A stretch of 64,000 nt of DNA from Euprymna scolopes. Its lineage: Eukaryota. The DNA lies in assembly GCA_053919585.1 (NCBI GenBank), contig CM132803.1; one strand, given 5' to 3'. The notes beneath the pieces are model-generated. The model did not search any database and was not told the DNA's origin. It saw nothing but the letters and a program-made list of their open reading frames with translations. Both the position numbers and the translations under genes were made by a program. Positions 1,241-48,100 of the stretch are shown here, in pieces. Positions within the stretch are counted from its first letter, which is position 1; every line of letters begins with the position of its first letter.

Positions 1241-1554
1241 AAATACTTGCAGTTCTCTTGATAATTTTTATGCTTTGTTAGAGTCATTGGCTCTAGCCAC
1301 CATGATACACAGAGCAGACTTGATAGGACTGTGATTTTCTTTCTTTTTCATATTAGCACTCTCCCACTTCCATACATAAACATACACACACTGTAACATA
1401 CACATACACACACATGTGTGTGTGTGCCCAAAAGGAGGCTAACATTGTCTCCATACAATAGCATCAGCAGCAGTAGCAGTTGAGCTGTACACTAGGATAC
1501 AAATACGCATCTTGTTTCTTCATACATCTCTGCTTCATCAATACAACATTGCAG
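1241..1554 (+). promoter_or_regulatory. Putative promoter and non-coding exon 1 of Pcdh-1 (donor after 1554)
   Basis: One of six paralogous blocks (ATGATRCAYAGRRCAGAYTTGATAGGAC ... CTCTCCCAC ... AAAAGGAGGCTAACATTGT ... AGCAGCAG ... TGCTTCATCAATACAACATTGCAG|GTTAGT), each upstream of a Pcdh coding exon. It ends in a splice donor and has no conserved reading frame. TSS not determined. Confidence 0.75.
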
Positions 1555-2397
1555 GTTAGTTGACATTAACATTTTTATAACTTTCGTTTTTTTAAATTTG
1601 TATCATTTATGTTTATTTATATTTGTTTTGTAACAGATTAACAACAATTAAATGCATCAAGGCTTTTCTTTATACAAATTCAATCAGTTTTCTAGCATAG
1701 AAAATTCTAACTTCGAAATTTTCACAATTTAATCAACTCACTATTTTGCAATCATCGTACAACATGTAAAAATGTCTGACTCATACATTTGGCATGTTTA
1801 TTTAAAACGTTATATTAATATATTATAAGTTTATTCAAAATTTGTTTATACAAGGATTATCGCAAACCTAAAAAAAAAAAAAAAAAATCAAGCTTGAAGG
1901 AAATTTTATTTAAATTTTAATTATGATTTTTTTAAATTATTTTAGAACACGCAGTGATTTTCTTTGTTAAAATGACACAATCTTCAGAAACTAAATGTTT
2001 GAAAATAAATTATAATAAATTGGTATATCACTCTTTAGCAATAATCCTTGTTTACATGTTATACCATTTTGATGAAAATATACCATCAGCATAAGACAAT
2101 ACATTAAATGTTATCTTTCTTTATTTCAGACATTATCTTTTTAATAGCATGATATTATCAGGTTTCATTACAAATTTTCACTTTTATGTTAACCAATGAT
2201 AAAATTGAAATTGAATAAGCATTCATTTCATTTAACTTTATTCACTACTAGTTATCTTGAAATGTTTAAAATCTGCTTTTATTTAAGTAATAAAATAGTA
2301 GAGTTGTATTTACATGTTGTTTCCCAGTAGTACTGTGCATGCATGGTTGCTGTATAAAGAAACAGAAACAGCTTATGCTGACTACACCCCTTAAATA

Positions 2398-7224: not shown

Positions 7225-8183
7225 ATTATATTAGCATTAAGATGGACTCTTATAAAAATTTGATGTGCATTAAAAATAATACACAGTAACATACAAAAGA
7301 ATGGGAGTTAAATTTTTTTTTTAAAGAAATATTTTTATGGTAGCAAATTTAACTTCAGTTGGGAGCGACTTAAAAACAGTATTAATCATTCAATAGTATG
7401 ATCCTTAACTTTAACTTTGAGAATAATCCTTATTGAAAATTGGTAGGTTGATAGATGATACAGAAAATTAGTATTTCCCTAAAATAATATTCTATTTTTT
7501 ATTTGTATTGACAAGTTGATAACATCTAATGTATGTTAACTGAATTGACATCAATATTAAATTATTTTTAATACACTTAAGAGACATCATCATATTCAGT
7601 TTTGAACCTATAAATGGGTTGACTTATATACATTAGAGGGATTCATAAGAGATGTTCATACTTTTGCATACATATGGAGAAAATGTCATATTCTTTTCAT
7701 ATGTGAAAGTGATTTCAGATACACATTAAAATAATTTTTGTATTAGCTGTAATCTATATAAAAAACAAACAATGCCATGGTAGAGGGAATAACTATAAAA
7801 AAAAGTAAAAATCTATGAATTCAGTACAAAAAATATTGAATTAGAAGTGATTTTAGAACCTGGTAAGCAAACAGTCTGTTTAATGAGTTTCTACTTTCAT
7901 TTCATCAATCGACATATTAGATTTATTATATAAGCATACTGCTTAATCATTTTCTTTATTTTGTCTTTAAGTAATCGCTTGATGCAGAAACTTTTAAAGT
8001 TTTCATTTTCTTTTTAATTTCAGGTAAAGTATTTTGAATCTAACAAAGTTTATTTGTTATATTCAAAAGTGATTATTTTCCTAAGATTCAACATTGGTGA
8101 CTTATTCGATTTACATGTATGATGCGATGTTATGACATGTAACCTAAAATGTGTCCTTTTTTTCAGGAAAAATACAAATAAAA

Positions 8184-11100
8184 ATGACAAAATATAACAC
8201 AAGTGTTTACATGTTGATAATGATGATGCTGTATTTCTTCACATCTGTCATACATTTGATCCATGGTGTAGATCTGAGATACAAAATAGATGAAGGAAAA
8301 AGTCCAGGAACTTACCTTGGTGACATTGCTTCAGACTCTCATATCATGGATGACATTTCTTTGGAAAATAGAAGACTGATCACTTTCAATCAATTATTAC
8401 AAGAAATAACGGGCACTTCACAGTTGTTCCATGTCTCTCGGAAGAAAGGAAAACTTTTCACTTCACAGACATTGGATGCTGAATCCCTTTGTACCTACAA
8501 TACAGAATGTTTCCAAATGGTGGATGTGGCTGTACGACAAGGAAAGACATTCTTGAAGATAATTAAAATTAAAATAATTATAAATGATGTCAATGATAAT
8601 AAACCAGAATTTCCTGAAAAGGAAATTCATTTGGAATTCATGGAAGGTGTAAAAAAAGGATTTAAAAAATCTATTTCGAATGCAAAAGATAAAGACATTA
8701 GTATTTTGAATTCTCAAATCACATATGAACTAAGAGAACAAAATAATCAACCTTTTTCTTTATCAATCCAAAAAACACCTTTTGGTATTCCAAAACTAAG
8801 CATTATCGGTGAGGACACATTAGACAGAGAAGAAAAAGATTCATACATGTTGCAAGTGATTGCAAGAGATGGTGGATCTCCATCAAAAGAAAGTGTTTTA
8901 GATATCCATATTAAAGTAAAAGACTTCAATGATAATGCACCAGTTTTTAGCAAAGATATTTACAATGTTTCAATTAATAACCAAGAATATAGTGATAAGC
9001 CTTTTGTCACAGTTTTAGCAACAGATTTGGATGAAGGAGAAAATGGAAAAGTTTCTTATTATATCAGCACAGAAACATCAGAAGATGTAAAAAATCATTT
9101 CAAAGTAAATGGTTTATCAGGGGAAGTATTTTTGACAAACAAACTGCCCTCAAATCGTAAAAAAGTTTATAAATTATTTATTGGTGCAAAAGATGGTGGT
9201 AAACCTCCACTAAATGGACTCACAGGTATATTAGTAAATGTAATTAATACAGAAAATCGACCACCAAAGATTTTTGTGACTTTCATGTCAGAATCAACGG
9301 ACAAAATTGCAACTATTTTAGAAGACACTGAGATAGGCAGTTTTATTGCTTATGTTAAAGTGACTGACCCTGATGCTGGACAAAATGGACAGGTCAACTG
9401 TGAGTTGCACCATGATAAATTTCGTTTACAGAAATTAAAATCCAAAGAATACAAAGTGACATTGAAACACAAAGTTGACAGAGAAATGCAAGAGCACCAT
9501 GATGTTACAATCAGCTGCAAAGATGAAGGATCTCCTCCACAACACAGTGATAGCAAGTTCTCCATCAAAGTCAAAGATGTCAATGATGTAAGACCACAAT
9601 TTACAAAAGATACATTTAAATTCTCTGTGTTTGAGAATGAAAGTCCAAAGACGTCAGTTGGTTCTATCAATGCCACTGATCCTGATCTGGGAGCTGGCAG
9701 TAGACTCACATATTCTTTGCTTACGAAAAATGAAGACTTCCTACCTTTCAAGATAACCAGTGATGGCTTGATTTCAACAATCATGTCTCTCGACCATGAG
9801 TTCAAAGACATTTATAAATTCAACGTTTTAGTGAAAGATAATGGAAACCCTCCACTTGATAATAGCGTCAATGTCATTGTGCAGATTGAAGATAAAAATG
9901 ATAATGCTCCATATTTTACCTTTCCCAGTGTGAATCCTTTCAATCTCGATGTCAAATATCATCCACATCATACAAAGAACATCACTCTTCTCAAGGCTGC
10001 CGACAGTGACAGTCAAGAGAATGCATTTCTCAAATATGAAATAACTGCAGGCAACGATAAACAGTTGTTTGCCATCAATCATTATACTGGATTGTTGTCT
10101 TTCACTCGCTTACTTGGCCATCAAGATGCTGGCTCCTATCACCTGCAGTTTATGGTCAAGGATAGTGGTAGTCCAGTTTTATCTGCAAAGACATCAGTCT
10201 TTTTGACATTGACAGTTAGTAACAATACCGCAGATATCTTAAATGCTGCCTATACGCACACTGATATCAAGATCCACCAGTATTTACTCATTGTCATTGT
10301 GTTGGTTGCAGTCACCGTTGCTATACCAATTACTGCTGCAATTTCCATCTGCATCCTTCGTTGCATTGATACCAGAAGTGTTGCACAAGCACATCCATTG
10401 GCTGACTCTTCCAGCAAATATTATCCCGAACAGGCACATGCGATGCATCCGTCTTACCAGACTACTTATTGGTCTGGTGTGTCTGTTGCTGTGCGAGCAG
10501 AACAAGATGTGCTTTGTAGAACTCTACCGGGAAGAGGCAGAAGGCCACAACATCGTGCAGATGTCACAAATGATGGACGGAGAAGTTCAGCCCTGGGAAT
10601 TAAAGTCCAGACAGCTACAGAAGTCATCTATGAGGTAGGAATTCATTTTCAATTTTTACTTTTAAATAACTATATCAATCCAACCTTGGCTAAGAACCTT
10701 TACTCTCATTTTTCTTTTGTTACTTTGTAAGAAATATAAATGGAGAATTGTATGTAATAAAAATTGTCATGTAATAAAATTTAATAGACATCTTACAAAA
10801 ACTTAAAAAAAAACAAAAAAACAATGGCTACAGAAGTCATCTTAGAGGTTAGAATTTTTTTTTATTTTTTTTTTCCTTAAAATTTGTATCTCACTAATTA
10901 TTTTAAATTGCTTTTTTTTTTTTTAGAAGTAATAAAGCAATATTTTTTGCTAAGTGCTTGTAGTTAATTTGTATTTAGTAAGAATTCAACTCATTATTAT
11001 GAAACAAAAATGTAAAAATGCTATTTTCAGCTTGGCCAGTGATATGGCAACATTGCATTTAACATCTCTAGCATGTTTATCCATCAGACTGGCTTTTCAT

Positions 11101-15002: not shown

Positions 15003-15327
15003 AAAATACTTGCCTTTCTCTTGATAATTCGTTTGCTTTGTTAGCCATTAGCTCTAGTTGCCATCATGCACAAAGCAGACTTTGGAGGACTGTGACTTTC
15101 TTTCTCTTTCACATATGAGCACTAACCCACATCCACACATTAACATACACTATTTGTAACATGCACACATGTACACATTGTGTGCTCAAAAGGAGGCTAA
15201 CATTGTCTTCATACAATAGCATCATCAGCAGCAGTAGCAGCTAAGCTGTACACCAGGATACAAATACGCATCTTTCTCTTCATACTGCTTCATTTCTGCT
15301 CTCTGCTTCATCAATACAACATTGCAG
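15003..15327 (+). promoter_or_regulatory. Putative promoter and non-coding exon 1 of Pcdh-2 (donor after 15327)
   Basis: Paralog of 1241-1554; ends CAACATTGCAG|GTTGGT. Confidence 0.75.
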
Positions 15328-17459
15328 GTTGGTTGACATTAACATTTTTATAACTTTATTTTTTTAATTTCTATCTTTTATTTGTTTTATGACAGATTAA
15401 CAACAATTGAATACACTAAGGATTTTCTTTATACAAATTCAATCAGTTTTCTTGCATAGAAAATTCTAACTTTGACATTTTCACAATTTAATCAATTCAC
15501 GTTTTTACAATCAACGTACAACATGTAAAATGACTCATGCATTTGGCATGTTTATTTGAAATGTTATATTGATATTATTTTAAAGCTTTTCAAAATGTGT
15601 TTATACAAGGAATATTTCTTTTTTAAATATGATAAATTTAAAGGGAATTTATTTCAAATTCAATTATATGTTTCTTCTATAACACAGTATTTTGCTATAA
15701 GACAGCACCATATCTAGAAACCTAAATGTCTTGTTATAGACAATAACTCTTGAGTCCTCATCCCTGAGTAAATTTTATTTACACCATTCCAATGAAAATA
15801 TTCTATTAGATAAAAGCAAATACATCAAATGTAATCTTCCTCTATTTTAAAGTATATCTGTTTATTAGCAATGATTGGACTGTGAGACTTCTTTTATAGA
15901 TTTTCTATCATATCATTATTATTATTATTATTATTGTGTAATAGGACCATTTAAAAATCAAGAAACCTCTCAATTATATCATGCTAATAAAAAAAAATTA
16001 AATTTGAAATTATGGAAAATAGCATTTTAAATATTGTTTTGAGTCACTCATGGTAATAAAAATTTAATGAATTAATAATTTATTTAATTTTAATTTAACT
16101 TTATTTATTACTAATATTGCTTGGGAGTATTTAAAGTCTATTTTTATTTATTCTAGTACCAAAATAATATTAGATAAGTTGACCTGTCCATTGTTGTTGC
16201 ATGACACTCTCATATGTGTATTGTGGTGGGTTTCATTTTGTGAGAAAATTTATTTTTCTTTTAAAAATAAGATTGTTCAAAGTTTGTTCGAAAAAAGGAA
16301 CTAATGACTTATGAAGAAGATTATGAAATTGAACAGAAAACAACAAGGAATTTTTTAAAACTAAATTCAGCATAAAGATATTTTAGAATATTATATAAGC
16401 ATCAATGTCATTGTCATGGATTATATTTACATGTTATTAGTTTAATATATAATTAAATTAACCTTTTCAATAGTACTTATTTCTATTAAAATCATGGAAA
16501 AAATTTTCATAGTTAAAAAAAAAAAAATGGTAAAATTATAGCCCTACATACTATGTAAATGCTTTTGACCTTTTTTTCAGAGAGGTAAACAGCCTCATAA
16601 ACCTGGGGTAAATATAAAGGACTTAGAGTAGGGGATCAGTTTTGCCTATAAACTTAACATAAAATGATTAACTATTTCCAGGTCACCAGATGGTAATTAA
16701 TTGTATTTATCACTTAAATAAGTAGGTATTATGGAAAAACTGGAACTTTACACCCCATTTTTAAAAGACATAAAAGCATGCCCTTCCTTAACCTTATCAC
16801 TAACCTCAAGTATGGGTGGCAATATGAATAAAATTTTCTTTTTATAAGGACAGAAACCATGAGAACGACATTAGTGTAATGGGGCTGTTAAAAGTTAATT
16901 AACAGACTGCTGAATGAGTAAAAGTCAATTTTGGCCTCTTAACAGTAATTATTTTATTTATAACATATTTACTATGTATTTTAAGCAGAATTACTGTTTC
17001 CAAGAAATTAAGAAAATTACCAATAATTCAAAGTAAACAAATAAAAAATTGGTTACTAAATATATATTTTAAATGCCATCTTGTTTTCAATTCATATGTT
17101 AAACTGATCCTCATTCTAATGTCAAAAATATATTTTTTTATTATTTATTTTTATTATCATGTTTTTCAGGTTGTTTATATGTGATTGCCTGATAAAAGTA
17201 GAATCTTATTTTAATTTTTGGATGAAGTAGAATAGGTAACAGATTTACAATAATACATTGTAAACATTATTATTAGTATTTAATAAGACAAACTTATGCA
17301 AAACTGATTTCCCAGTTTAAAATCTTAAATAACTTTTTTACATTTAATTTTGGCATTAAGTTTTTCAGGCTGCTTAAAAGTAGAATTTAATTCTCTTATT
17401 TGATGAATTAGTATTATGTGTAGGGTTTCTATAATAAACAGTATTATTATTGAAATGTA

Positions 17460-22308: not shown

Positions 22309-22675
22309 TTATATAATTATTATAAGCTATAAAATATAAAAACTATGTACAAATTTTTAATAACTTCTTTGTTAGAAACAACTCTCTTTGTCATAATTTA
22401 TTATATAAAGATGCTGCTCAAGAAATTGTTTCCATCATTTTGTCTTTAAATAATTGTTTGACATTGTAAAAACCTTTTAAGTTATTTTCTTTTCAATTTC
22501 AAGTAAAGTATTTTAAATCTAACAAAGTTTATTTGTTAGATTTAAAAATGATTAATTTTTGTAAGATTCAAGATTCATATTAACATTGGAGGCTTATTCA
22601 ATTTGCATGTATGACCTAGGGACACCTAACCTAAAATGTGTCTTTTTTTTTCAGGAAAAAACAAAATAAATAAAA

Positions 22676-25600
22676 ATGATAAAACACAACACAACTGTAA
22701 ACATGATTATGATGATGCTGTATTTCTTCACATCTGTCATACATTTGATTCAAAGTGAAGACCTGAGATACAATATAAATGAGGGAAAAAGTCCAGGAAC
22801 TTACCTTGGTGACATTGCTTCAGACTCTCATATCATGGATGACATTTCTTTGGAAAATAGAAGACTGATCACTTTCAACCAATTATTACAAGAAATAACA
22901 GGCACTTCACAGTTGTTCCATGTCTCTCGGAAGAAAGGAAAACTTTTCACTTCACAGACATTGGATGCTGAATCTCTTTGTACCTACAATACAGAATGTT
23001 TCCAAATGGTGGATGTGGCTGTACGACAAGGAAAGACATTCTTGAAGATTATTAAAATTAAAATAATTATAAATGATGTCAATGATAATAAACCAGAATT
23101 TCCAGAAAAAGAAATTCATTTGGAATTCATGGAAGGTGTAAAGAAAGGATTTCAAAAATCTATTTCTAATGCAAAAGATAAAGACATTAGTATTTTGAAC
23201 TCCAAGGTTACATATGAATTAAGAGAACAAAATAATCAACCTTTTTCTTTATCAATTCAAAAAACACCTTTCGGAACTCCAAAACTAAGCATTGTGGTTA
23301 AAGAAGAAGTAGACAGAGAAGAAAAAGATTCATACATGTTACAAGTTATTGCTAGAGATGGTGGATCTCCACCAAAAGAAAATGTTCTAGATATTCACAT
23401 TGCAGTGAAAGACTTCAATGATAATGCACCTGTTTTTAGCAAAGATATTTATAATGTTTCCATTAATAACCAAGAATATGGTGATAAGCCTTTTGTTACG
23501 GTTTTAGCAACAGATTTGGACGAAGGTGAAAATGGAAAAGTTTCTTATTATATCAGCACAGAAACTTCAGAAAACATAAAGAGTCATTTTAAAATAAATG
23601 ATTTATCAGGGGAAGTATTTTTAACCAACAAACTGCCTTCAAATCGTAAAAAAGTTTATAAATTATTTATTGGTGCAAAAGATGGTGGCAATCCTCCACT
23701 AAATGGACTTGCAGGTATATTAGTAAATGTAATTAATACAGAAAATCGGCCACCAAAGATTTTTGTAACTTTCATGTCGGAATCGACTGACAAGATCGCA
23801 ACCATTTCAGAAGATACTGAGATTGGCAGTTTTATTGCTTATGTTAAAGTGACTGACCCTGATGCTGGACAAAATGGACAGGTCAACTGTGAGTTGCACC
23901 ATGATAAATTTCGTTTACAGAAATTAAAATCCAAAGAATACAAAGTGACATTGAAACACAAAGTTGACAGAGAAATGCAAGAGCACCATGATGTTACAAT
24001 CAGCTGCAAAGATGAAGGATCTCCTCCACAACACAGTGATAGCAAGTTCTCCATCAAAGTCAAAGATGTCAATGATGTAAGACCACAATTTACAAAAGAT
24101 ACATTTAAATTCTCTGTGTTTGAGAATGAAAGTCCAAAGACGTCAGTTGGTTCTATCAATGCCACTGATCCTGATCTGGGAGCTGGCAGTAGACTCACAT
24201 ATTCTTTGCTTACGAAAAATGAAGACTTCCTACCTTTCAAGATAACCAGTGATGGCTTGATTTCAACAATCATGTCTCTTGACCATGAGTTCAAAGACAT
24301 TTATAAATTCAACGTTTTAGTGAAAGATAATGGAAACCCTCCACTTGATAATAGCGTCAATGTCATTGTGCAGATTGAAGATAAAAATGATAATGCTCCA
24401 TATTTTACCTTTCCCAGTGTGAATCCTTTCAATCTCGATGTCAAATATCATCCACATCATACAAAGAACATCACTCTTCTCAAGGCTGCCGACAGTGACA
24501 GTCAAGAGAATGCATTTCTCAAATATGAAATAACTGCAGGCAACGATAAACAGTTGTTTGCCATCAATCATTATACTGGATTGTTGTCTTTCACTCGCTT
24601 ACTTGGCCATCAAGATGCTGGCTCCTATCACCTGCAGTTTATGGTCAAGGATAGTGGTAGTCCAGTTTTATCTGCAAAGACATCAGTCTTTTTGACATTG
24701 ACAGTTAGTAACAATACCGCAGATATCTTAAATGCTGCCTATACGCACACTGATATCAAGATCCACCAGTATTTACTCATTGTCATTGTGTTGGTTGCAG
24801 TCACCGTTGCTATACCAATTACTGCTGCAATTTCCATCTGCATCCTTCGTTGCATTGATACCAGAAGTGTTGCACAAGCACATCCATTGGCTGACTCTTC
24901 CAGCAAATATTATCCCGAACAGGCACATGCAATGCATCCGTCTTACCAGACTACTTATTGGTCTGGTGTGTCTGTTGCTGTGCGAGCAGAACAAGATGTG
25001 CTTTGTAGAACTCTACCGGGAAGAGGCAGAAGGCCACAACATCGTGCAGATGTTACAAATGATGGACGGAGAAGTTCAGCATTGGGAATCAAAGTGCAGA
25101 CGGCTACTGAGGTCATCTATGAGGTAGGAATTCATTTTCAATTTTCACTTACAAATAATTGTACCTACCCAGCATTGCATTGGATTCTTTTCTCTTGTTC
25201 ATTAAATAAAAGATTTTATACTATAAAAAGTTACTTTTGAAATAACATTTTACAGATAACTTACAAAAACTTGAAATTCCTCTTCAAATATAAAGTAATA
25301 ATTTTTGTTTAAATTTTTTTAAAACCATCTGTATTCACACACATACATGATTGTCTAACTTTGTCACAAATAATGCAATGTCATCTACTTTATATTTATG
25401 CTAATCCTTCTCTTTTTTTATAAAGATTTCTTTATTTTTTCTTAATTTTAGTGTTTGAAAATGTTTTGTGAAGACAGATATGACTAATCTGATTTCATAA
25501 TCAGAGAATGTCCAACTACCTTGTTCATAAACAATTAGTCAATCATGAGTGTGTGTGTATACATACAAATTACTTTCTTTTATAATTTGCTCATTGTCTC

Positions 25601-30571: not shown

Positions 30572-30848
30572 AAAATATTTGCCTTCATCCAGATAATTTT
30601 TCTGCTTTGTTAGAGTCACTGCCATGATGCACAGAGAAGACTTGATAGGACTGTGGCTTTCTTTCTCTTTCACATATGAACACTCTCCCACATCCACACA
30701 TAAACGCACACATGTACACATGCAAGTGCCCAAAAGGAGGCTAACATTGTGTTCAGACAATAACAGCAGTAGCAGCAGAGCTGTACACCAGGATACAAAT
30801 GAATCTTGTCTCGTCATACATTTCTGCTTCATCAATACAATATTGCAG
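30572..30848 (+). promoter_or_regulatory. Putative promoter and non-coding exon 1 of Pcdh-3 (donor after 30848)
   Basis: Paralog of 1241-1554; ends CAATATTGCAG|GTTAGT. Confidence 0.75.
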
Positions 30849-32329
30849 GTTAGTTAGGCCATTTTTATAACTTTCTTTTTTCATTTTATCAATCTTTTAT
30901 GTTTATTCATGTTTGTTTTGTGGTAGATAAACAACAATTAAATACAGTAAGGCATTTTTATTTACAAATTCAATCAGTTTTCTTGCAGACAACATTCTAA
31001 CTTTGATATTTTCCACAATTTAATCAATTCACTATTTTTCAATTCATTCGTACATGTCTGACTCATGTATTTAGTATGTTCATATGAAATGTTGTATAAA
31101 GGTTTTTTTTTTTTTTTTATTTGTTTAGACCAATTAAAAAACAATGATAAACTGGAAGGAAATTTATTTCAAATTCAACTACATGCTTTTCTTTCTTTTT
31201 TGAGAACACACAGCATTTGGTTTTGTTAAGGACACCATGTAGAAACTAAAATGTCTTGTTATAGATTATAATAATTTGGTTCATTAGTCTTAATCCCTGA
31301 GTAGATTTGACACCATTGCATTAAAATATTTCATCATCTCAAAGAAATACATCACATGTTATCTTTTTTTATTCCAAATTTTATCTTTTCATAAAAATTT
31401 GAATGAATTAAGAATTTATATAAATTGAATTTAGCTTTATTATTAACAAGATCTGCATAGTCAATATTGTTATAAACTTAATGAAGGACCTATTTTATCT
31501 GTCTCTATTTCGTTAAATATTATAAAACAAGCTGGAAAAAGAATCTGAGGACACTGAAACTGTTTACATGGTTTGCAGTGATGAAAACACTGAATTTAAG
31601 TTACTATAAATATTTTGTTCTCTAATTATAAATGTTATAAATATGTAGTATGATTCGACCCCTTGGTGTCTGGGGTCTTTTAGTTGACCCTCTAAATCTT
31701 TAAAATAATGTCCAAATGTAGTATAGCACAGTGGAATGGTTCACCTATGGTGGATTTTATTTTGTAATTAATTTTTTAAAATAAGATTTTTAAAAAGTCA
31801 TTAGGGAATTGGAACTCAAAATTAGGTATGGTAGGAGTGCTAATTAATTAGCCTTTAAAACTTTCAATATTTTAATACACGAGAACTTCTTAAGAATTTT
31901 AAAGCCAGTTTAAATGCTTTCACTTTGAGAGATTATAAAGTTATACATATTTACATTATTAAATGTTTTCCTTGGCTATGGTGGTGTGTGTTGTGTATTT
32001 TTGCATGGAGGAGAGGTTTTGATAACATACAATTTAGAATAGGATTGCAATCCAATGCCACGGAAGTAAAGAAGTTTAAAAGAATTTTTAACAACAAATT
32101 CTAAGTATTTATTTATTAAATAAAATAGTATTCATGAGCAGAAATATGTTTTACATTAAAAGCAAAATTTGAAATAAAAACAAAAAAAGGATAGTTAATT
32201 AATGAAACATCCTTTTGCAAATCAATATGAAAATTAGTTAATCTTAAGACATATACCTAACCAGTATATCAAAAAGATAGGTTGCTCCTGTTGTGCGAAT
32301 TTGAAAAGAGCACTGTAATCACACTGTTA

Positions 32330-33985: not shown

Positions 33986-36106
33986 CCATTTCTTGGATAT
34001 GACGATCATAACTACTAAAAACTGATAATGTTTTAAAAATCTATACCATGAACATTTGTATTATCTATTAATGTCAGAAAATATTTGATAGTGCCTTTTT
34101 TAAGAGTCTATACTTAATTTGTTTATTTGTGACAGTTGTACTCTGATTATACTGAAACTAACCTGCAAGTGTGCAGGGCAAGGGCATTTCTGTCGGGTTA
34201 CCTTAGCCTTCTCCTTTAGCTCTCCCTAGCCATACCTGAAAGCAGCATGGAGGTTTCTGTTAGGAATACCTAAATCTTACCTTTTAACTATCCCTCAAAT
34301 GCAGCAGACAAAAACAGTAATGTGTTTATTTTGGTGTAGTCATGGACTGAACTTAAAAGCAGTTGGGAATTGAGTAATAAAAGAAAACTATTAAAAATGT
34401 TATTTTACTATAATTATAATTTTAGTAATATTACTATCAGAGTGACATATATAAAATGTCAGTCTTAAGATCAGGAGTTAATACTGTTTTACAGAGATTT
34501 CTTATATATTTACATGATTTATTTTGTAAAGTGTTGTATATTGAAGGGTTAGTTTAATACTGTTGGAATAAGGAGGAGTACTAGTGTTGGGTCAAAGGAT
34601 GGCACTTCATATAATATATCTGACATATTACTGTGTAGTAATCAATGAAATTTTTTAATGCAAATTATTTAATTAGAAAGTTGATTTCTTTTATAGGCTG
34701 TTTCAATCACATTTTAATAACATTGATTGTTCAAGATTATAACATCAGAAGTATCAAAATAGACAAACATTTAGAAATTGTAACACAAAAAAAAAAAAGA
34801 TAAAAACAAATTAAAATATTTTCTGCCCCAAAATTGAATTAAATTTTCACTTTTCCCTGATTAGCAAAACATATTTTTTTTGACTGACAAATTTCCAACA
34901 ACACCTAAAAAGTAGAATAATTTTGAAAGCACAAAATTGACAACCAAATTTTGCAACAAATAATGCAGATGTTCTTTTAAAAGCTTGAATATGTTCTCTC
35001 AGGGCAAAACTTAAAAAAAAAATAGTATATTCTTAACTCCATACAAAAATAATTTTATGATTTTATTGTTTTTAATATTGAAGGAGAAAGGGAAGGGTTA
35101 GTTAAAACATTTTTTAAAATTATATGAAAAGAATTTATAGCACATTTTTTGTAGCTTAAAATAATTAAAAAAAAACTCAATGTTATTCCTTGACAAAATA
35201 AGAAAATTTAAATATGATCAAGTTTTGCTTGTTTTCATTATATGCATTAATACTAAATGCAGCATATAGACATTTGCTGCTGACAACATTGTAATTAACT
35301 TTTACTTCTGATAAAAAAAAAAAAAAATGGTTTCCCCTCCAAAAAATATTCCAAACATCATAATAAAATTTTTTAAACAAATTATCTCAAAGTACATTTT
35401 AGTATTCTGAAGAACATGGTGCCACAAAACACATAAAGAAATGATGATTCAGAATGAAATATAATTAGTTTTTTTTTTATATACTATAGTTACAGCTTAT
35501 CAAGACCAAGAGGCCACTTAAGAATAAGGGTTAATAAGTATCAGGTGAGACAACTGTAATGATTGGTGATAGCGGAAATTGGGTGGAAATTGATTATTGA
35601 AGAGAATGGCTCAACAAGAAATATGTTTATGTTGACCTTGAAAACGACTATGTTGTAGTCAGCAAGAAAGCAGCCCCATGATATTGTGCTCTACAGACAG
35701 GCAGTTCTAGGAAATAAACTTTACCCTTGAAATTTTTGTTTAGTTTTAGATACAGTGTAATACAATTTAAGTTTTACTTTGAGAATCTGTCTGACTTTTC
35801 AAATAATATAAAAATCTAACGACTTATGTTATGAATGATTATTTTGTTTTATAGCATTTTTGGTTTATTTAATATTTGGGTTATTTTGACTCCATTTATT
35901 TTGATTAAAGGTTATTATGCTTAAGTTTCTTAATATTTCCAAATATTTAATAGATTCTAGTTTGTATACGATTATGTTAAGAAAGAAACTACTTAAGTGC
36001 AACTGCACAGTGCATCGATTCAAAGATATGCAATAAATTGAATGAGAAATAGCTAATACAAAGTCTTTTTTTAAAAACAAATAATCATATCTTTTCAGAA
36101 ACCCTA

Positions 36107-39100
36107 ATGCAACATCAGATAATGCCAATAATTGTATGCATATTCCTGCTGGTCTTACAACTTTGCCAAGGTGCAGATCTGACATACAATGTTGATGAAG
36201 GTAAGAGTCCAGGTACTTACCTGGGTGACATTGCAGCTGACTCCCACATCATGGATGATGTCCCTTTGGAAAACAGGCGTTTGATCACTTTCAACCAACT
36301 GCGACAGGAAATGGCAGGCACTTCTCAGTTATTTCATGTCTCCGAGAAGAAAGGAAAACTTTTTACTGCTCAGACTCTGGATGCTGAATCAATGTGTAAA
36401 TGGAATACAGAATGCTTCCAAATGGTGGATGTTGCTGTACGACAAGGAAAGACATTCATGAAGATTATAAAAATTAAAATAATTATAAATGACATTAACG
36501 ATAATGCACCAAAATTTCCAGAGAAACAAATTAACATGCACATCTCTGAAGGCGTCAGAGAAGGTTTCAAAAAAACGGTTCCAGTTGCAAAAGACAAAGA
36601 TGTTAGTGTAATTAATTCGCAGATAACTTATGAACTGAAAAAGACAAAAAATGAACCGTTCTCTTTGTCAATAGATAAAACCCCATTTGGCCCAACACAA
36701 TTAGATTTATTTGTTGATGGTAAACTTGACAGAGAAAAGAAAGATTCGTACATGCTCCAAATAATTGCAAAAGACAATGGATCTATACCTAAACAAAGCA
36801 TTTTAAATATTCATATCATAATAACAGATTTGAATGACAATCCTCCAAGATTTACAAAAAGTATTTATAATGTTTCGATAAAAAATGAAGATTATAAAGA
36901 GAAGGCAATTGTTACTGTGTCCGCTATCGATTTGGATGAAGGAGAAAATGGAAAAGTTTTCTATCATTTTAGTTCACAAACATCAATTGATGACAAAAAC
37001 AAGTTTGAACTTAATGAAAAAACAGGAGAAATATTTTTAAAACAGAAATTACTGTCAGTCCAGAACATTTATAAATTGTATGTAATGGCAACTGACAGTG
37101 GACATTCACCATTAAGTGGATTTGCAGGAGTGTTAGTAAATATTATAAACACTGAAAACAGATCGCCAAATATTTTTGTCACTTTTATGTCTGATTCAAC
37201 AGATAACACAGCTACTATACTTGAAGACATTGAAATTGGTAGTTTTATTGCTTATGTTAAAGTAACTGACCCTGATGCTGGACAAAATGGACAGGTTAAC
37301 TGTGAGTTGCACCATGATAAATTTCGTTTACAAAAACTAAGATCCAAAGAATACAAAGTGACATTGAAACACAAAGTTGACAGAGAAATGCAAGAGCACC
37401 ATGATGTTACAATCAGCTGCAAAGATGAAGGATCTCCTCCACAACACAGTGATAGCAAGTTCTCCATCAAAGTCAAAGATGTCAATGATGTAAGACCACA
37501 ATTTACAAAAGATACATTTAAATTCTCTGTGTTTGAGAATGAAAGTCCAAAGACGTCAGTTGGTTCTATCAATGCCACTGATCCTGATCTGGGAGCTGGC
37601 AGTAGACTCACATATTCTTTGCTTACGAAAAATGAAGACTTCCTACCTTTCAAGATAACCAGTGATGGCTTGATTTCAACAATCATGTCTCTTGACCATG
37701 AGTTCAAAGACATTTATAAATTCAACGTTTTAGTGAAAGATAATGGAAACCCTCCACTTGATAATAGCGTCAATGTCATTGTGCAGATTGAAGATAAAAA
37801 TGATAATGCTCCATATTTTACCTTTCCCAGTGTGAATCCTTTCAATCTCGATGTCAAATATCATCCACATCATACAAAGAACATCACTCTTCTCAAGGCT
37901 GCCGACAGTGACAGTCAAGAGAATGCATTTCTCAAATATGAAATAACTGCAGGCAACGATAAACAGTTGTTTGCCATCAATCATTATACTGGATTGTTGT
38001 CTTTCACTCGCTTACTTGGCCATCAAGATGCTGGCTCCTATCACCTGCAGTTTATGGTCAAGGATAGTGGTAGTCCAGTTTTATCTGCAAAGACATCAGT
38101 CTTTTTGACATTGACAGTTAGTAACAATACCGCAGATATCTTAAATGCTGCCTATACGCACACCGATATCAAGATCCACCAGTATTTACTCATTGTCATT
38201 GTGTTGGTTGCAGTCACCGTTGCTATACCAATTACTGCTGCAATTTCCATCTGCATCCTTCGTTGCATTGATACCAGAAGTGTTGCACAAGCACATCCAT
38301 TGGCTGACTCTTCCAGCAAATATTATCCCGAACAGGCACATGCAATGCATCCGTCTTACCAGACTACTTATTGGTCTGGTGTGTCTGTTGCTGTGCGAGC
38401 AGAACAAGATGTGCTTTGTAGAACTCTACCGGGAAGAGGCAGAAGGCCACAACATCGTGCAGATGTCACAAATGATGGACGGAGAAGTTCAGCCCTGGGA
38501 ATTAAAGTGCAGACGGCTACTGAGGTTATCTATGAGGTAGGTGTCTTTCTAGTTAATTTGAAATAACATTTCATGAGGTAACTACAATTTCCAGACTTTT
38601 TTCATATGAGCACTTTTATTGATAGTACACACATGAAACTCTAGTCTCCTTCGAAGTAATCTCCTCCAGCTGTAATGCACTTGTACTGTTCCAACAATTT
38701 CTGGAAGACCCCACTGAAATTTTCTTGTGTGCGCGTGTCAATGATCCTCGTCACAGCCTTTTTCATCTCCTCAATTGTCTCATAATAACAGCCTCTAAGG
38801 TTTTCTTTGAGCTTAGAGAAGAACCAAAAGTCACAGGGAGTAAAGTTTAAAGTATATGGAGGGCGAGGAACTGTCTTCATGTCCATCTTGGTCAAATAGT
38901 CCGTGATAAGGATGTAGTTGTAGACTATAGATTTGGGACAAACTTCACACAGATCCTCCGCATGATTGTGTGTACAGTTCCTGACACTGACATCAAACTG
39001 TGCACTTAATGTCTCTAGACACATGACGGTCCATATAGATGAAATTCTTTATTTGGCCAATCAACTCTGGTGTTCTGACTTCCTTACTCCTCACACATCT

Positions 39101-41954: not shown

Positions 41955-42092
41955 AAATACCTTTTTAATATTGTGATTTTTTGTGCTTTGTCAGTTGGCT
42001 CTAGACGCCATGATGCATAGAACAGACTTAATCGGACAGTGGCTTTCCTTCTCCTTCATATATGCACTCTCCCACATCCACACATTAAACAT

Positions 42093-42160
<68 letters not shown>

Positions 42161-42302
42161 ATACCTTAATGTACACGTGTGTGTGTATCACCAGAGATGA
42201 ACAATGTGTTCACATAATAGTAGCAGCAGCAGATGTGTACACTCAAATACATACACATCTTTTCTCGTCACACAGTTTTGCTTCATTCATACAACATTGC
42301 AG
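41955..42302 (+). promoter_or_regulatory. Putative promoter and non-coding exon 1 of Pcdh-4 (donor after 42302), with expanded (CA)n
   Basis: Paralog of 1241-1554; ends CAACATTGCAG|GTTAGT. Confidence 0.72.
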
Positions 42303-43949
42303 GTTAGTTTTCAATTTTCTTTTTTCTGTCATTTTAATCTTTCTTTCAAGTTCATTATTTTGTGTTGCATTAACAAAGACAAACATAGCTTCATTGAAAA
42401 CATGAACAGTCTTTTTTTTTTTTGCTAAAAACTGCATATCTCTCATAGAGAGAAAATCTGAGTCATGCATTGAGTACATTCTTTTGTGTTTCATAAATTA
42501 TTTCCATGTTATAAAAATATTTTTCTTTATTCCACTTGAAATCTCTTTGTAAAACTTTTCTTCTACATTTTATTATTTAAACCTTGAAGTTTAGAAATTA
42601 GAAGGCTTGTATTAATTTATTCTTATATTTGTGAGCATAATGTTTTCCATTTTATTTTAATGTCAGCTTCTATTGAATTTGACTTAGTACAATGGTTTTA
42701 ATAAATTTGAAGACCGTCAAAAAGCCATACTTCCTCATATTTTATAAAAATGGATGAACTCAGTTAGTTGTTTCATGCATACATGATTTATTCTAAACAT
42801 TTTTATTTGATAAGGCACAGATTGTTAAATGTACAATCTTTTTTATTTTGTTTAGTTGGTACATGGATTCAATAAAAACTATCCTCAGTTAATACATATC
42901 AAACCTGATTATTATTTAATAATAAATAAACATATAAGAATACATAGTATTAATATATAATGATAAAAAAGATCAAAATTATAATTTAAGTTGTGTCCTT
43001 TTCATGTTCAATTATTTTTGTTTGATCGTTAATACAAATGTTGATAACATTTAATTTTATTAAAATCTGAACAAGTTTTTCCGTCATGTTTCTTAGGTCA
43101 TAGCTGTTTGACTGTAATAGCATTATAATCTTCCAATATTGAAACACATTAAATATAAAAGTTAGATTTTCATTTTTCCATTCTATTTCTACCATTATTT
43201 TAGTATTTTACATCAACAAAAATTATGATATTATTAAAGAAAACAATCTTCTGCATAGGATTGCATTCTTAAAAACACAAACTTGTAACAAAATAAATAT
43301 AAATTTAAAAAACATGTTCTCAAAAACTGACATTAAAATTAAAATACATAAAAAATTAGAAATGGAGAAATCATTTTTTCATAGGGGTTGATTAAACATC
43401 TTTTTATATCAATTTAAATCAACTGCTAGATGATTAAAGCCATTTTTATACAAACATGTAATTATTATTATTATTATAAACAAATACAATCTCAATGGCA
43501 TAGGCAAATAGGTTAGGTTTTTTAATTCTTAAACCACTTACAAAATAATAGATAAAAATTACTCGTTTTTACATAGTTCAAGAAATACAAATTAGATTAC
43601 TAAAATCTAATATTTGAGCTGAAAAAAGTTTGAGCGACAAAATAAAATTTTTTATTAGTAGTAAACAAAAACAAATGGATAATAAATATTATGTATCATA
43701 AGTTTTGAGATGAAGATTAATAATTTATATACAAAGTTCCATCAGTCAAAATGTTAAAATAACAACTAAGATAAAACTGTAGGCTGAGTAATTCAAAATA
43801 AACCTTTAATTCGATAAAAAATTTGACAGTTTATAAATATTATTAAATAGAAAAAAAAAATAGTTAAAAGTTCATAATTGGCTAATATAATTGATGTTTC
43901 CGACACTGAGATTTTCCTCTGTGTATATTATATCTAAAGGGTTCAAAAG

Positions 43950-44390: not shown

Positions 44391-45181
44391 TAAAAATAAA
44401 AATAAAATATAATTTGATGTTATGTTGCTCAAAAGCTTTGGACAATTAATAAGATACACAGAATTGAATATATTGCATAAAAAAATCAATACTTATGTCC
44501 CCTCCATGTTAAATATATAACACTTATGTTCATTTATCCATTTTCTCAATATTGGGATAATATTTGAAATATGTAATAATATTGTTTTTCAGACTAAGTA
44601 AGGAATCAAAAATACAATTAAAAAAATTGAAAATTACTTTACATGAATAGTATTAGATGTTCTTGTTTTCAAAATAAGAATAAAATAGAAGTAAGAAATA
44701 CTTAGAGTGCAGAAGATTTATTGCTTATTGTCTGTTCTTGGAGTAGTTTCATTTTATTTAATTAATAATGAAGTATTATCTAACTCTTGATTTAACAAGA
44801 GTTAAAATAAAATTCCTTTCAACTCAATTAATTTCTTATAAATAACTTCAGAATTTTTGAGATGAGAATCGATTTGTATTATTTGCACTACTTCTTTCAT
44901 CTTGGATGTTATTCTCACAATATTTTGGCCAATGTAATCGATGACCTTTTTCGGGCACATATCAAGAAGGTAGGAAGTTACAACAGTCGTGAGAATAGTC
45001 TGAATAATCCAAAATATATAAAAAAATTCTTGATGTAAAAAAAAAAAAAAGAAAGAAAGAATTACTAAATAGAAAAATATTAGTCTCTTAAAACCCATAA
45101 AGTAATATTACCTTTCATTTCAGGCATACAAGAATTTTGAATAAAGTAAAGCATTGAAATCTGGAATACCTGAATGTGATT

Positions 45182-48100
45182 ATGAAAATATCAGCATTAA
45201 TATTCTTGTGTTTCATCAAACTGTGCTGCAGTGCTGACCTGACATACAGTGTAGATGAGAGCAAGAGTCCAGGCACCTACCTGGGAGACATTGCTGCTGA
45301 CTCCCACATCATGGATGATGTCCCTTTGGAAAATCGGCGACTAATCACTTTCAACCAACTGCGACAAGGAAATGCAGGCACATTACAGTTGTTTCATGTC
45401 TCCAAGAAAAAAGGCAAACTCTTTACTGCCCAAACTCTCGATGCTGAATCAATGTGTAAGCGTGACATTGAGTGTTTTCAAATGGTTGATGTGGCTGTGA
45501 GGGAAGGAAAAACGTTTATGAAAATTATAAAGATTAAAGTCATAATAAATGATGTCAATGATAATCAACCTGAATTTCCAGAGAAAGAAATTGATTTACA
45601 CTTTTCTGAAGGAGTTAGTAAAGGATTCAAAAAACCCATTCCGAATGCCATTGACAAAGACGTTAGTGCTATTAATTCCAAAATAACTTATGAACTAAAG
45701 AAGAACAAAAATGACCCATTTTCTCTTGTTGTACAAAAGATTCCATTTGGAGCACCAAAACTTAGTATTTCTGTTGAAGAAAAGTTAGACCGTGAAAGTA
45801 AAGATTTTTACTCAATACAAGTTATAAGCAAAGATGGCGGATCACCGGCAAAGCAAAGCGTTTTAAATGTAAACATAATTATTGAAGACATGAATGATAA
45901 TGCACCAATGTTTAGCAAAGACATTTATAACATTTCAATAATGAACAAAGATTATGGAAATGTACCAATCGTAGAATTGACGGCACATGATTTAGACGAT
46001 GGAGAAAATGGAAAAGTTTCATATTATTACCAATCACAAACGTCTGACGAAATCAAAAAGTTTTTTGAGTTGGATAAAGAAACAGGGAAAATATATCTTA
46101 AAGAAAAGTTACCTCAAAATCCAGAATCTGTCTATAAGTTATTTGTTAGTGCAGAAGATGGCGGGGAATCGACACTTAGTGGTTATGCTGGAGTTCTTGT
46201 GAATGTTGTTAACACTCGAAATCGACCACCAAATATATTTGTTACATTCATGTCTGAAGCTACAGATAACACAGCTACAATTTTAGAAGATGTTGAAATT
46301 GGTAGTTTTATTGCTTATGTTAAAGTGACTGACCCTGATGCTGGACAAAATGGACAGGTTAATTGTGAGTTGCACCATGATAAATTTCGTTTACAAAAAC
46401 TAAGATCCAAAGAATACAAAGTGACATTGAAACACAAAGTTGACAGAGAAATGCAAGAGCACCATGATGTTACAATCAGCTGCAAAGATGAAGGATCTCC
46501 TCCACAACACAGTGATAGCAAGTTCTCCATCAAAGTCAAAGATGTCAATGATGTAAGACCACAATTTACAAAAGATACATTTAAATTCTCTGTGTTTGAG
46601 AATGAAAGTCCAAAGACGTCAGTTGGTTCTATCAATGCCACTGATCCTGATCTGGGAGCTGGCAGTAGACTCACATATTCTTTGCTTACGAAAAATGAAG
46701 ACTTCCTACCTTTCAAGATAACCAGTGATGGCTTGATTTCAACAATCATGTCTCTTGACCATGAGTTCAAAGACATTTATAAATTCAACGTTTTAGTGAA
46801 AGATAATGGAAACCCTCCACTTGATAATAGCGTCAATGTCATTGTGCAGATTGAAGATAAAAATGATAATGCTCCATATTTTACCTTTCCCAGTGTGAAT
46901 CCTTTCAATCTCGATGTCAAATATCATCCACATCATACAAAGAACATCACTCTTCTCAAGGCTGCCGACAGTGACAGTCAAGAGAATGCATTTCTCAAAT
47001 ATGAAATAACTGCAGGCAACGATAAACAGTTGTTTGCCATCAATCATTATACTGGATTGTTGTCTTTCACTCGCTTACTTGGCCATCAAGATGCTGGCTC
47101 CTATCACCTGCAGTTTATGGTCAAGGATAGTGGTAGTCCAGTTTTATCTGCAAAGACATCAGTCTTTTTGACATTGACAGTTAGTAACAATACCGCAGAT
47201 ATCTTAAATGCTGCCTATACGCACACTGATATCAAGATCCACCAGTATTTACTCATTGTCATTGTGTTGGTTGCAGTCACCGTTGCTATACCAATTACTG
47301 CTGCAATTTCCATCTGCATCCTTCGTTGCATTGATACCAGAAGTGTTGCACAAGCACATCCATTGGCTGACTCTTCCAGCAAATATTATCCCGAACAGGC
47401 ACATGCAATGCATCCGTCTTACCAGACTACTTATTGGTCTGGTGTGTCTGTTGCTGTGCGAGCAGAACAAGATGTGCTTTGTAGAACTCTACCGGGAAGA
47501 GGCAGAAGGCCACAACATCGTGCAGATGTCACAAATGATGGACGTAGAAGTTCGACTCTTGGAATTAAAGTGCAGACGGCTACTGAGGTCATCTATGAAG
47601 TAAGTATTTAATTTAGTATAATACTGAACAATAATATCACTTTTAGTTTCATTATTCCTTTAAAATTGCATTAGAGTGACATTTTAAAAAATAAATATTC
47701 ATATCCTTTGCATGGAACTATACATGGCCAAAGTGTACTCAATTTTCATATCCATAACAAGTGGAAAGAAAAGAGTGAAATTATTTTCATATTCATAATC
47801 ATTTTATGCCTTGGCAATTTAAGCATAATAAATGATTTTATTATTTATTTTTATACTATAATAAATTTGAATAGATAATTTTTTTTTCTAAGTTATCCTT
47901 CTTATTTCAAATGTTTAACTTATATTTTTATGTTTATAAACCAACTATAAAATCATTATTGAAGTAATTTTTACTATAAAATATTTTTGATACTTTTATT
48001 GAATATTCATTCAGTTTGTTTTGTCATAGTAGTAGTTTTAATAAAATGCATAGATTGTTTCATCTTGTATTAATTATTCAATAAAGGAAATTCGAGGTGC

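What the first reader, a model, noticed from the sequence alone, without database searches (positions are those of the whole stretch)
1241..1554. Conserved promoter/first-exon cassette in front of all six genes: candidate invertebrate analogue of the clustered-Pcdh promoter element
Seen: six copies (1241-1554, 15003-15327, 30572-30848, 41955-42302, 49675-50000, 59170-59434), one per gene and 2.8-7.3 kb upstream of the coding exon. They keep ordered motifs: TGCTTTGT, ATGATGCAYAGRRCAGAYTTGATAGGAC, CTCTCCCACATCCAC, a CA tract, AAAAGGAGGCTAACATTGT, a CAG tract, GCTGTACACCAGG, and TGCTTCATCAATACAAYATTGCAG|GT. The flanks of the more distant copies are unalignable. Inference: each gene has an equivalent promoter and non-coding leader, the arrangement needed for promoter competition or stochastic choice in single neurons. 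Vertebrates use a CTCF-bound CSE; I see no CGCT/CTCF-like motif here, so the mechanism would be different. TGATAGG resembles a reverse CCAAT box and TGATGCA a C/EBP-ATF site (speculative).
Basis: partly seen in the sequence, partly recalled or inferred. Interest (0 to 1): 0.85.

Follow-up and report, generated by a model that had tools for sequence, protein, structure and literature searches.

The report
Conserved non-coding leader exon of protocadherins
Each of six neighbouring cephalopod protocadherin (neuronal adhesion) genes starts with the same ~310-base non-coding first exon, kept by natural selection and spliced onto the coding exon; this is a normal gene part, useful for studying how these genes are controlled, and not evidence of a vertebrate-style "promoter choice" system.

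Summary
Six collinear copies lie at the stated places, one per protocadherin gene on the + strand, 2.8-7.3 kb upstream of the large cadherin exon. Each ends in CAG|GTTAGT or CAG|GTTGGT. A 26-nt end motif hits 6 times against 0 expected.

The block is mainly a transcribed non-coding first exon, not a demonstrated promoter.
- RNA data show the predicted junction 42302|45124 (GT..AG) for gene 4.
- Many RNA runs hold block 1.
- Ten further copies, again one per gene, lie in a second cephalopod assembly.

Purifying selection, not gene conversion, keeps the block. Where synonymous sites are near saturation (0.44 identity), the block stays 0.70 identical, against 0.30 upstream and 0.39 in the intron. 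Within-genome and between-genome identity are equal.

Conservation starts sharply at about 1246 and stops at the donor. DNA upstream of the block is not conserved among old paralogues.

The blocks contain no CTCF-like or CGCT motif, no conserved RNA fold and no Rfam match.

An AP-1 palindrome sits 157-223 nt into the intron in 16 of 16 copies.

Stochastic promoter choice is untested. The transcription start site was not mapped, and splicing was shown directly for one gene only. The scan also noted per-gene upstream elements in other protocadherin arrays of this genome (s1-288450, s1-292377); I did not check them.

The parts
1243..1554 (+). Gene 1 leader exon (conserved block; 3' end is the splice donor CAG|GTTAGT)
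   Evidence: HMM hit 1233-1562. Conservation rises at about 1246 and falls after 1560. RNA runs hold 0.41-0.66 of the words of 941-1554, of which the block is 0.51.
15005..15327 (+). Gene 2 leader exon (donor CAG|GTTGGT)
30574..30848 (+). Gene 3 leader exon (donor CAG|GTTAGT)
41958..42302 (+). Gene 4 leader exon, conserved part. RNA extends at least 175 nt further upstream, to the A-run at 41760-41780.
   Evidence: Joint 42299->45121 (cut +3, so 42302|45124), GT..AG, in an X1 contig of depth 57 and in one raw X21 read. X1 contig covers 41759-42085 at depth 40. Read directions indicate + strand RNA. A-run seen.
49678..50000 (+). Gene 5 leader exon (donor CAG|GTTAGT)
59172..59434 (+). Gene 6 leader exon (donor CAG|GTTAGT)
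8167..8186 (+). Gene 1 acceptor (polypyrimidine tract, cag|G) and start ATG at 8184
22655..22678 (+). Gene 2 acceptor and start ATG at 22676
36099..36109 (+). Gene 3 acceptor and start ATG at 36107
45124..45184 (+). Gene 4 acceptor, the only one confirmed by RNA, and start ATG at 45182
53151..53223 (+). Gene 5 acceptor and start ATG at 53221
63649..63652 (+). Gene 6 acceptor and start ATG at 63650
1777..1783 (.). Intronic AP-1-type palindrome TGACTCA, 223 nt after the donor of gene 1
   Evidence: TGASTCA lies at +157 to +223 in 16 of 16 copies. The window has 9 such sites in all, and 6 are these.
15531..15537 (.). Same element, gene 2 (+204)
31059..31065 (.). Same element, gene 3 (+211)
42459..42465 (.). 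Same element, gene 4 (+157, TGAGTCA)
50195..50201 (.). Same element, gene 5 (+195, TGAGTCA)
59646..59652 (.). Same element, gene 6 (+212)

Best explanation
Each block is the non-coding first exon (5' leader) of its own protocadherin gene. Transcription starts at or upstream of the block's 5' edge. The leader ends at a conserved CAG|GTTAGT donor and is spliced over a 1.2-7.3 kb intron to an acceptor that lies 1-70 nt before the start codon of the large cadherin exon.

The leader was inherited with each whole-gene duplication and has since been kept by purifying selection, while the surrounding non-coding DNA decayed.

Shown here:
- the copies and their one-per-gene placement in two genomes;
- transcription of two blocks;
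- the exon 1-exon 2 junction of gene 4;
- constraint without gene conversion.

Inferred: conservation and G+C content follow the exon's limits, ending at the donor and starting near where RNA starts, and the sequence has strand-specific features. These are a CU-rich tract, CAG and CA tracts, and an upstream ATG kept in 16 of 16 copies. I therefore think the constraint acts mostly on the mRNA leader, as a shared 5'UTR that sets translation, stability or localisation for all family members (about 0.45). The alternative is that the same DNA is a platform for transcription factors just downstream of the start site (about 0.35). The conserved intronic AP-1 site shows that some DNA-level control lies right beside the block.
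For: - Six collinear copies in the window. Ten more lie on a 397-kb contig of another decapodiform assembly, each 1.2-2.9 kb upstream of a cadherin exon on the same strand.
- All 16 copies keep a GT donor. All six window acceptors are a polypyrimidine tract followed by cag|G.
- RNA: the joint at 42302|45124 with GT..AG ends. The spliced contig has depth 57, against 6.9 for the contig that reads into the intron. Read directions indicate + strand RNA. Block 1 is held by at least 12 RNA runs, the labelled ones spanning 5 studies.
- Constraint: in 36 gene pairs whose four-fold sites in the EC1-3 half are under 0.5 identical (mean 0.44), the block is 0.70 identical, upstream DNA 0.30 and the intron 0.39. 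Block identity follows the variable half (Spearman rho 0.70), not the converted half (0.36).
- Within-genome and cross-genome block identity are equal at matched divergence (0.73 vs 0.76; 0.78 vs 0.80). The converted half is 0.94 within a genome and 0.71 across genomes.
- The conservation profile steps up at about 1246 and falls just after the donor. Block G+C is 0.39-0.41 against 0.17-0.25 in the flanks.
- A cDNA contig of a 55%-identical paralogue from another species carries the block's core in its 5'UTR (E 1e-8).
Against: - The splice was seen directly for one gene only, through one contig with 26 nt on the exon 1 side and one raw read.
- The transcription start site is not mapped. For gene 4 the RNA contig runs at least 175 nt upstream of the block, which could mean an upstream start or read-through from gene 3. 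Read-through protocadherin transcripts are reported in octopus (PMC9712504).
- The block's 5' edge (...TGCTTTGTYAG) also looks like a branch point, polypyrimidine tract and acceptor, so the block could be an internal exon.
- Nothing here separates an RNA-level from a DNA-level function. No conserved RNA fold was found, and the upstream reading frame is not conserved as a peptide.
- No whole-genome search for the block was possible.
Confidence: 0.8

Rival explanations
1. Promoter-choice cassette. The block is the conserved promoter element through which protocadherin genes compete for activation, so that each neuron picks a few of them. This would be a cephalopod counterpart of the vertebrate CSE and CTCF system working through a different factor.
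For: There is one equivalent cassette per gene, under selection, in two genomes. A strictly conserved AP-1 palindrome sits next to it. No published description was found that excludes it.
Against: The conserved block is transcribed and bounded by the exon's limits. DNA upstream of it is not conserved. No CTCF-like or CGCT motif is present. Every tandem whole-gene duplicate has its own promoter, so the arrangement proves nothing. Single-cell atlases report ubiquitous and cell-type-specific protocadherins, about 19 per cell in octopus (PMC9712504, PMC12240821).
Confidence: 0.1
2. Internal exon or read-through. The block is a second exon reached from an upstream exon or from the preceding gene's transcript, and it uses the YAG at its 5' edge as an acceptor.
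For: Thirteen of 16 copies have YAG after a pyrimidine-rich stretch at the 5' edge, and conservation begins about 35 nt before it. Gene 4 RNA continues upstream of the block. Read-through protocadherin transcripts are known in octopus (PMC9712504).
Against: The X1 contig passes through that site without a break, at the depth of mature mRNA (40, against 6.9 for intron-containing RNA). No loose end or joint was listed there, though only the best-supported were shown. Three copies lack the AG at that position. For gene 1 the share of words held by RNA runs fits a start near the block's edge.
Confidence: 0.07
3. Passive remnant. The similarity is only left over from recent duplication, or is refreshed by the same gene conversion that homogenises the 3' half of the coding exon.
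For: The genes are tandem duplicates, and their C-terminal halves are strongly homogenised, with four-fold site identity of 0.92-0.96.
Against: The block is 0.70 identical where four-fold sites are 0.44 and the flanks 0.30-0.39. It is no more similar within a genome than between genomes, unlike the converted half.
Confidence: 0.02
4. Dispersed repeat or exonised transposon fragment that happens to lie near these genes.
For: The block contains microsatellite tracts (CA/TG and CAG). The introns are full of repeats.
Against: All 16 copies in about 130 kb of genomic DNA from two genomes lie in one orientation, one per gene, at the same relative place. None lies elsewhere apart from weak reverse-strand matches to the CA/TG tract. 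There are no terminal repeats or transposon reading frames. No match was found in JGI metagenome contigs, which is uninformative.
Confidence: 0.01

Closest known systems
Vertebrate clustered-protocadherin variable-exon promoters with the conserved sequence element (CSE) bound by CTCF
   Same: One conserved non-coding element per isoform unit, upstream of the large ectodomain exon, repeated along a tandem array of neuronal protocadherins.
   Different: By my own knowledge, the CSE is a promoter element of about 22 bp with a CGCT box, roughly 200 bp before the ATG, contiguous with the variable exon and bound by CTCF; variable exons are spliced to shared constant exons. Here the element is a transcribed exon of about 310 nt, separated from the coding exon by a 1.2-7.3 kb intron. 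It has no CGCT or CTCF-like core. Each gene has its own 3' exons (PMC9068888).
Mammalian odorant-receptor gene structure (non-coding 5' leader exon or exons spliced to a single coding exon, one promoter per gene in tandem arrays)
   Same: The same gene layout: a short non-coding leader, an intron of a few kb and one large coding exon, with many tandem paralogues each carrying its own leader.
   Different: By my own knowledge, odorant-receptor leaders are poorly conserved between paralogues, and singular choice is documented experimentally. Here the leader is strongly conserved and choice is untested.
Chelicerate shortened-Dscam clusters using alternative promoters (cited in PMC6339937)
   Same: An invertebrate tandem array of recognition-molecule units, each with its own upstream start.
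   Different: There the variable cassettes are joined to shared constant exons of a single gene. Here the units are complete genes.
Conserved upstream-ATG-bearing, pyrimidine-rich 5'UTRs that control translation (uORF or TOP-type leaders)
   Same: The leader has 3-8 upstream ATGs. One lies in a GCCGCCATGA-type context and is kept in 16 of 16 copies. There is a conserved CU-rich tract and a CCTTTC run at the 5' edge.
   Different: The uORF peptide and its stop position are not conserved. A distant paralogue's cDNA lacks the ATG. No start-site or translation data exist, so this is a resemblance only.

Membership tests
Non-coding 5' leader exon of a protein-coding gene | Transcribed on the sense strand | tested here: met
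   Gene 4 has + strand RNA over the block. Block 1 is held by at least 12 RNA runs. The other four blocks were not tested.
Non-coding 5' leader exon of a protein-coding gene | Ends at a splice donor joined to an acceptor upstream of the start codon | tested here: met
   RNA joint 42302|45124 with GT..AG ends for gene 4. By sequence, all 16 copies have a donor and all six window genes have an acceptor.
Non-coding 5' leader exon of a protein-coding gene | No conserved protein-coding frame | tested here: met
   Only short upstream reading frames of variable length, 9-108 codons. Third-position excess is 8/10 against 9/20, which is not significant. Residues vary.
Non-coding 5' leader exon of a protein-coding gene | Begins at a transcription start site | tested here: inconclusive
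   Word shares fit a start near 1246 or up to about 100 nt upstream. The gene 4 contig reaches at least 175 nt upstream. No capped-end data were available.
Vertebrate clustered-Pcdh CSE promoter element | Short promoter element with a CGCT box and CTCF core | tested here: not met
   No CGCT or AGCG in any of the six blocks. The CTCF-like core with up to 2 mismatches has 4 hits in the window, none in or near a block.
Vertebrate clustered-Pcdh CSE promoter element | Lies in untranscribed promoter DNA contiguous with the variable coding exon | tested here: not met
   The block is transcribed and separated from the coding exon by an intron of 2.8-7.3 kb.
Vertebrate clustered-Pcdh CSE promoter element | Variable exons spliced to shared constant exons | tested here: not met
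   Each unit repeats its own two downstream conserved islands, which are probably exons 3 and 4. The literature reports whole-gene duplicates (PMC9068888).
Vertebrate clustered-Pcdh CSE promoter element | Stochastic promoter choice in single neurons | not testable with these tools
   Single-cell RNA runs of the organism exist (X19, X20), but the single read-laying run had been used.
Dispersed repeat / transposable element | Many copies at unrelated loci, in both orientations, with transposon hallmarks | tested here: not met
   16 of 16 copies lie upstream of cadherin exons on the same strand, in about 130 kb of genomic DNA from two genomes. A genome-wide count was not possible.
Gene-converted (concertedly evolving) tract | Higher identity within a genome than between genomes at equal gene divergence | tested here: not met
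   Block: 0.73 and 0.78 within, 0.76 and 0.80 between. Converted half of the exon: 0.94 within, 0.71 between.
Structured RNA element | Conserved secondary structure with covariation, or an Rfam match | tested here: not met
   RNAalifold gives -6.3 kcal/mol with a covariation term of +0.22. No Rfam match reached a gathering score in the window.

The most novel reading that the evidence does not exclude
The leader exon and the invariant AP-1 site about 200 nt into the intron form one cis-regulatory cassette shared by a whole subfamily of cephalopod protocadherins. Through it, neurons would select or tune individual paralogues, by activity-dependent or competitive activation or by shared translational gating of the mRNAs. 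This would be an independently evolved regulatory logic for a neuronal barcode family that uses neither CTCF nor constant exons.
Probability: 0.12. Interest if true: 0.85.

Novelty: new member of a known kind. Interest (0 to 1): 0.4.

Why it matters
Cephalopods carry 170-320 protocadherin genes (PMC9068888, PMC12240821). How their expression is organised is unknown, and the papers I found do not describe any shared cis element.

This work defines such an element precisely: a leader exon of about 310 nt under purifying selection, with a neighbouring invariant AP-1 site, conserved across old paralogues and two genomes. It gives experimenters exact donor and acceptor junctions, a profile for annotating first exons across the arrays, and candidate motifs to mutate.

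It also tempers the attractive analogy with vertebrate promoter choice. The conserved part is the transcript's leader, not the promoter, and having one leader per gene follows from whole-gene duplication.

Tried and rejected
1. Conserved uORF peptide. At least one of two adjacent ATGs survives in 16 of 16 copies. However, residues 3-5 vary, the stop falls at codon 11 in 6 copies and far downstream in the others, and nucleotide conservation is equal in both groups. The third-position excess is not significant, and the distant cDNA L007 has no ATG there. I reject a coding element and keep the possibility of a generic uATG.
2. Conserved RNA structure. RNAalifold gives no covariation support and Rfam gives nothing.
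3. CTCF or CGCT element. Absent.
4. Own-species cDNA contigs to map the start site.
   - Full-length homologue search: best hits were only 81-85% identical and came from another assembly.
   - Search with the N-terminal 250 residues: no near-identical hit.
   - Look-up of the 80-residue reading frame in leader 5: not on record.
5. Upstream DNA of more distant subfamilies (P0016, P0021, P0032). The look-ups returned no DNA.
6. 5'UTRs of other paralogues' cDNAs. L002 gave no block match above chance, and L012/L013 gave only CA-tract matches.
7. JGI metagenome scan for the core motif. No hits, which is uninformative.
8. NF-Y box. The reversed CCAAT at 1286-1292 in copy 1 is not conserved in the other copies.
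9. TATA-like elements upstream. Their positions are inconsistent between subgroups in this AT-rich DNA.

Full report
**Setting.** The window holds six tandem protocadherin genes on the + strand. Five complete large exons lie at 8151-10730, 22676-25240, 36107-38566, 45176-47611 and 53221-55704, and a sixth starts near 63650. Each encodes Cadherin_2 plus five Cadherin-domain matches. The best named relatives are Acanthosepion pharaonis PCDH proteins at 56-57% identity and octopus proteins at 46-53%. The RNA runs that hold the sequence carry coded animal labels or the label 'mollusc metagenome'. Together this points to a decapodiform cephalopod; I did not determine the species.

**Observation.**
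- A profile built from them matches the window exactly six times, all on the + strand and all at the stated places.
- The 26-nt 3' motif occurs 6 times against 0.00 expected.
- Each block ends in CAG|GTTAGT (GTTGGT in copy 2).
- Each predicted acceptor is a polypyrimidine tract followed by cag|G, with the start ATG 1-70 nt downstream.

**More copies.** The closest proteins in the public collection (81-85% identity) lie on a single 397-kb ENA contig. About 67 kb of that contig was fetched as L001, L003, L004 and L005. The block profile finds ten more copies there. Each is 1.2-2.9 kb upstream of a cadherin exon on the same strand, and none lies elsewhere. All keep a GT donor.

That assembly is a different genome. 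Four-fold sites in the homogenised C-terminal half are 0.92-0.96 identical within each genome but only about 0.71 between them.

**Is the block an exon?** My one read-laying run covered 41700-47699.
- It returned a joint from 42299 to 45121. The cut fits equally well 3 nt to the right, which gives 42302|45124 with GT..AG ends.
- The joint appears in one X1 contig of depth 57 with 26 nt on the exon 1 side, and in one raw poly(A) read with 52 nt on its shorter side.
- A contig that reads on into the intron has depth 6.9.
- Read directions in the stranded-looking libraries indicate + strand RNA.
- A second query, the 300 nt upstream of block 1 plus block 1 itself, is held at 0.41-0.66 of sampled words by at least 12 RNA runs; the labelled ones span 5 studies. 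The block makes up 0.51 of that stretch.

Two blocks are therefore transcribed, and one junction is shown directly. The other five junctions rest on sequence alone.

**Where does transcription start?** I could not map the start site.
- For gene 1 the word shares fit a start near the block's 5' edge or up to about 100 nt upstream.
- For gene 4 an X1 contig at mature-mRNA depth (40) runs unbroken from 41759 to 42085. It starts at an A-run (41760-41780) that would break any assembly graph, so the RNA reaches at least 175 nt upstream of the block.
- In either case the conserved block lies inside the transcript.

**Extent and cause of conservation.** In a 16-copy alignment, mean pairwise identity is 0.3-0.5 upstream. 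It steps up to 0.68-0.86 from about 1246 and dips only in the CA/TG microsatellite (1381-1430). After the donor it falls to about 0.45-0.55 within some 25 nt. Block G+C is 0.39-0.41, against 0.17-0.25 in the flanks.

The paralogues are old. Four-fold sites in the EC1-3 half are 0.33-0.56 identical for most pairs, close to saturation, while the C-terminal half is homogenised (this agrees with scan note s1-244837). In the 36 pairs with four-fold identity under 0.5 (mean 0.44), the block is 0.70 identical, the upstream 230 nt 0.30, and the first 300 nt of the intron 0.39.

Block identity follows the variable half (Spearman rho 0.70) rather than the converted half (0.36). At matched divergence it is the same within and between genomes (0.73 vs 0.76; 0.78 vs 0.80). 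The block is thus held by purifying selection, not by concerted evolution or recent duplication.

**An older origin.** A Logan cDNA contig (L007) of a 55%-identical paralogue from another species carries the block's core in its 5'UTR. The core reads ACTTG.TAGGACTG..GCTTTCT followed by TTCTCTTTC (profile E-value 1e-8). Other contigs of the same gene join the same exon end to a different downstream sequence. Leader exons of this type therefore extend beyond this subfamily.

**What is inside the block.**
- The best-kept runs are ATACTTGCCTTT, TGCTTTGT, ATAGGACT, TTTCTTTCTCTT, ACATATG, ACATCCACACATAAACA, CTAACATTGT, the CAG tract, TACACCAGGA and the last 20 nt before the donor.
- An ATG in a GCCGCCATGA-type context is kept in all 16 copies. 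Either of two adjacent ATGs can be lost, but never both. The reading frame it opens is not conserved as a peptide.
- There is no conserved RNA fold, no Rfam match, and no CGCT or CTCF-like core.
- Any assignment of these motifs to transcription factors (GATA-like TGATAG, E-box CATATG, SOX-like CATTGT/ACAAT, YY1-like GCCGCCAT) rests on consensus sequences recalled from memory. I did not test any of them.

**Beside the block.** The AP-1-type palindrome TGASTCA lies 157-223 nt into the intron in 16 of 16 copies from both genomes, with C or G at its centre. The window contains only 9 such sites in all. This confirms scan note s1-244996 and extends it to a second genome. It shows that DNA-level control sits next to the leader.

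**Mechanism.**
- Established: a per-gene non-coding leader exon under selection.
- Inferred: the constraint respects the exon's limits and the sequence is strand-asymmetric, so I favour selection on the mRNA leader, affecting translation, stability or localisation (about 0.45). The alternative is a DNA platform just downstream of the start site (about 0.35).
- The promoter-choice reading remains possible (about 0.1), but nothing specific supports it. One promoter and leader per gene follows from whole-gene duplication (PMC9068888). Published atlases describe ubiquitous and cell-type-specific protocadherins, about 19 per cell in octopus (PMC9712504, PMC12240821).

**Novelty.** I found no paper describing this leader exon. 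In kind it is an ordinary gene feature, so I class it as a new member of a known kind. Its interest is moderate: it is a concrete handle on cephalopod protocadherin regulation.

Noticed in passing
window 43900-44500 (intron 1 of gene 4); related copy in reverse orientation at 11257-11483: A repeat family with very high RNA word depth (10^4-10^5 in X1 and X6), many internal joints and loose ends. It looks like an abundantly transcribed dispersed repeat. ARAGORN finds no tRNA and Rfam finds no match.
   Followed up: partly
window 41914 and 41924; whole stretch 41700-47699: The RNA contig differs from the DNA by A>G at both sites, at full contig depth. A>G and T>C are the commonest change classes in all four runs. 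This could be A-to-I editing or allelic variation. It needs a DNA run from the same animal.
   Followed up: no
window 1302-1334 and the same place in all copies: An upstream ATG in a GCCGCCATGA-type context opens a uORF of the form M(M)HR.DLIGL. At least one of two adjacent ATGs is kept in 16 of 16 copies. Each leader holds 3-8 upstream ATGs.
   Followed up: yes
window 1650-1714 and 1764-1803 (intron 1, +95 to +250): Moderately conserved intronic stretches, 0.54-0.61 identical against a background of about 0.4. The second contains the AP-1 site in the context TGASTCATGCATTTGG.
   Followed up: partly
window 26856-26869 (-) and 27246-27259 (+): An inverted pair of near-identical 14-mers (CCAAYAGGTGTCGC) about 400 nt apart, picked up by the CTCF-like scan. 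They may be terminal repeats of a small transposon.
   Followed up: no
window 11630-11774 and 11943-12329, with counterparts in units 2-5: Two further conserved islands downstream of each large exon. They are probably exons 3 and 4 (cytoplasmic tail and 3'UTR) and are repeated in every unit, so there are no shared constant exons.
   Followed up: partly
L003 6001-7416 / L004 3604-5019: Reading frames of a Tc1/mariner-type transposase (HTH_Tnp_Tc3_2, DDE_3) lie between two protocadherin genes in the related assembly.
   Followed up: no
L007 about 290 vs L009/L010 about 28 and L006 1517: In the cDNA of a distant paralogue, the same leader-exon end (...ACTACAG) is joined to different downstream sequences. 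This suggests alternative 5'UTR splicing or chimeric contigs.
   Followed up: partly
intron 1 lengths: window vs L001/L003/L004/L005: Intron 1 is 2.8-7.3 kb in the window's genome but 1.2-2.9 kb in the related assembly. Gene spacing is 8-15 kb against about 7 kb. The window's array appears to have been expanded by repeat insertions.
   Followed up: no
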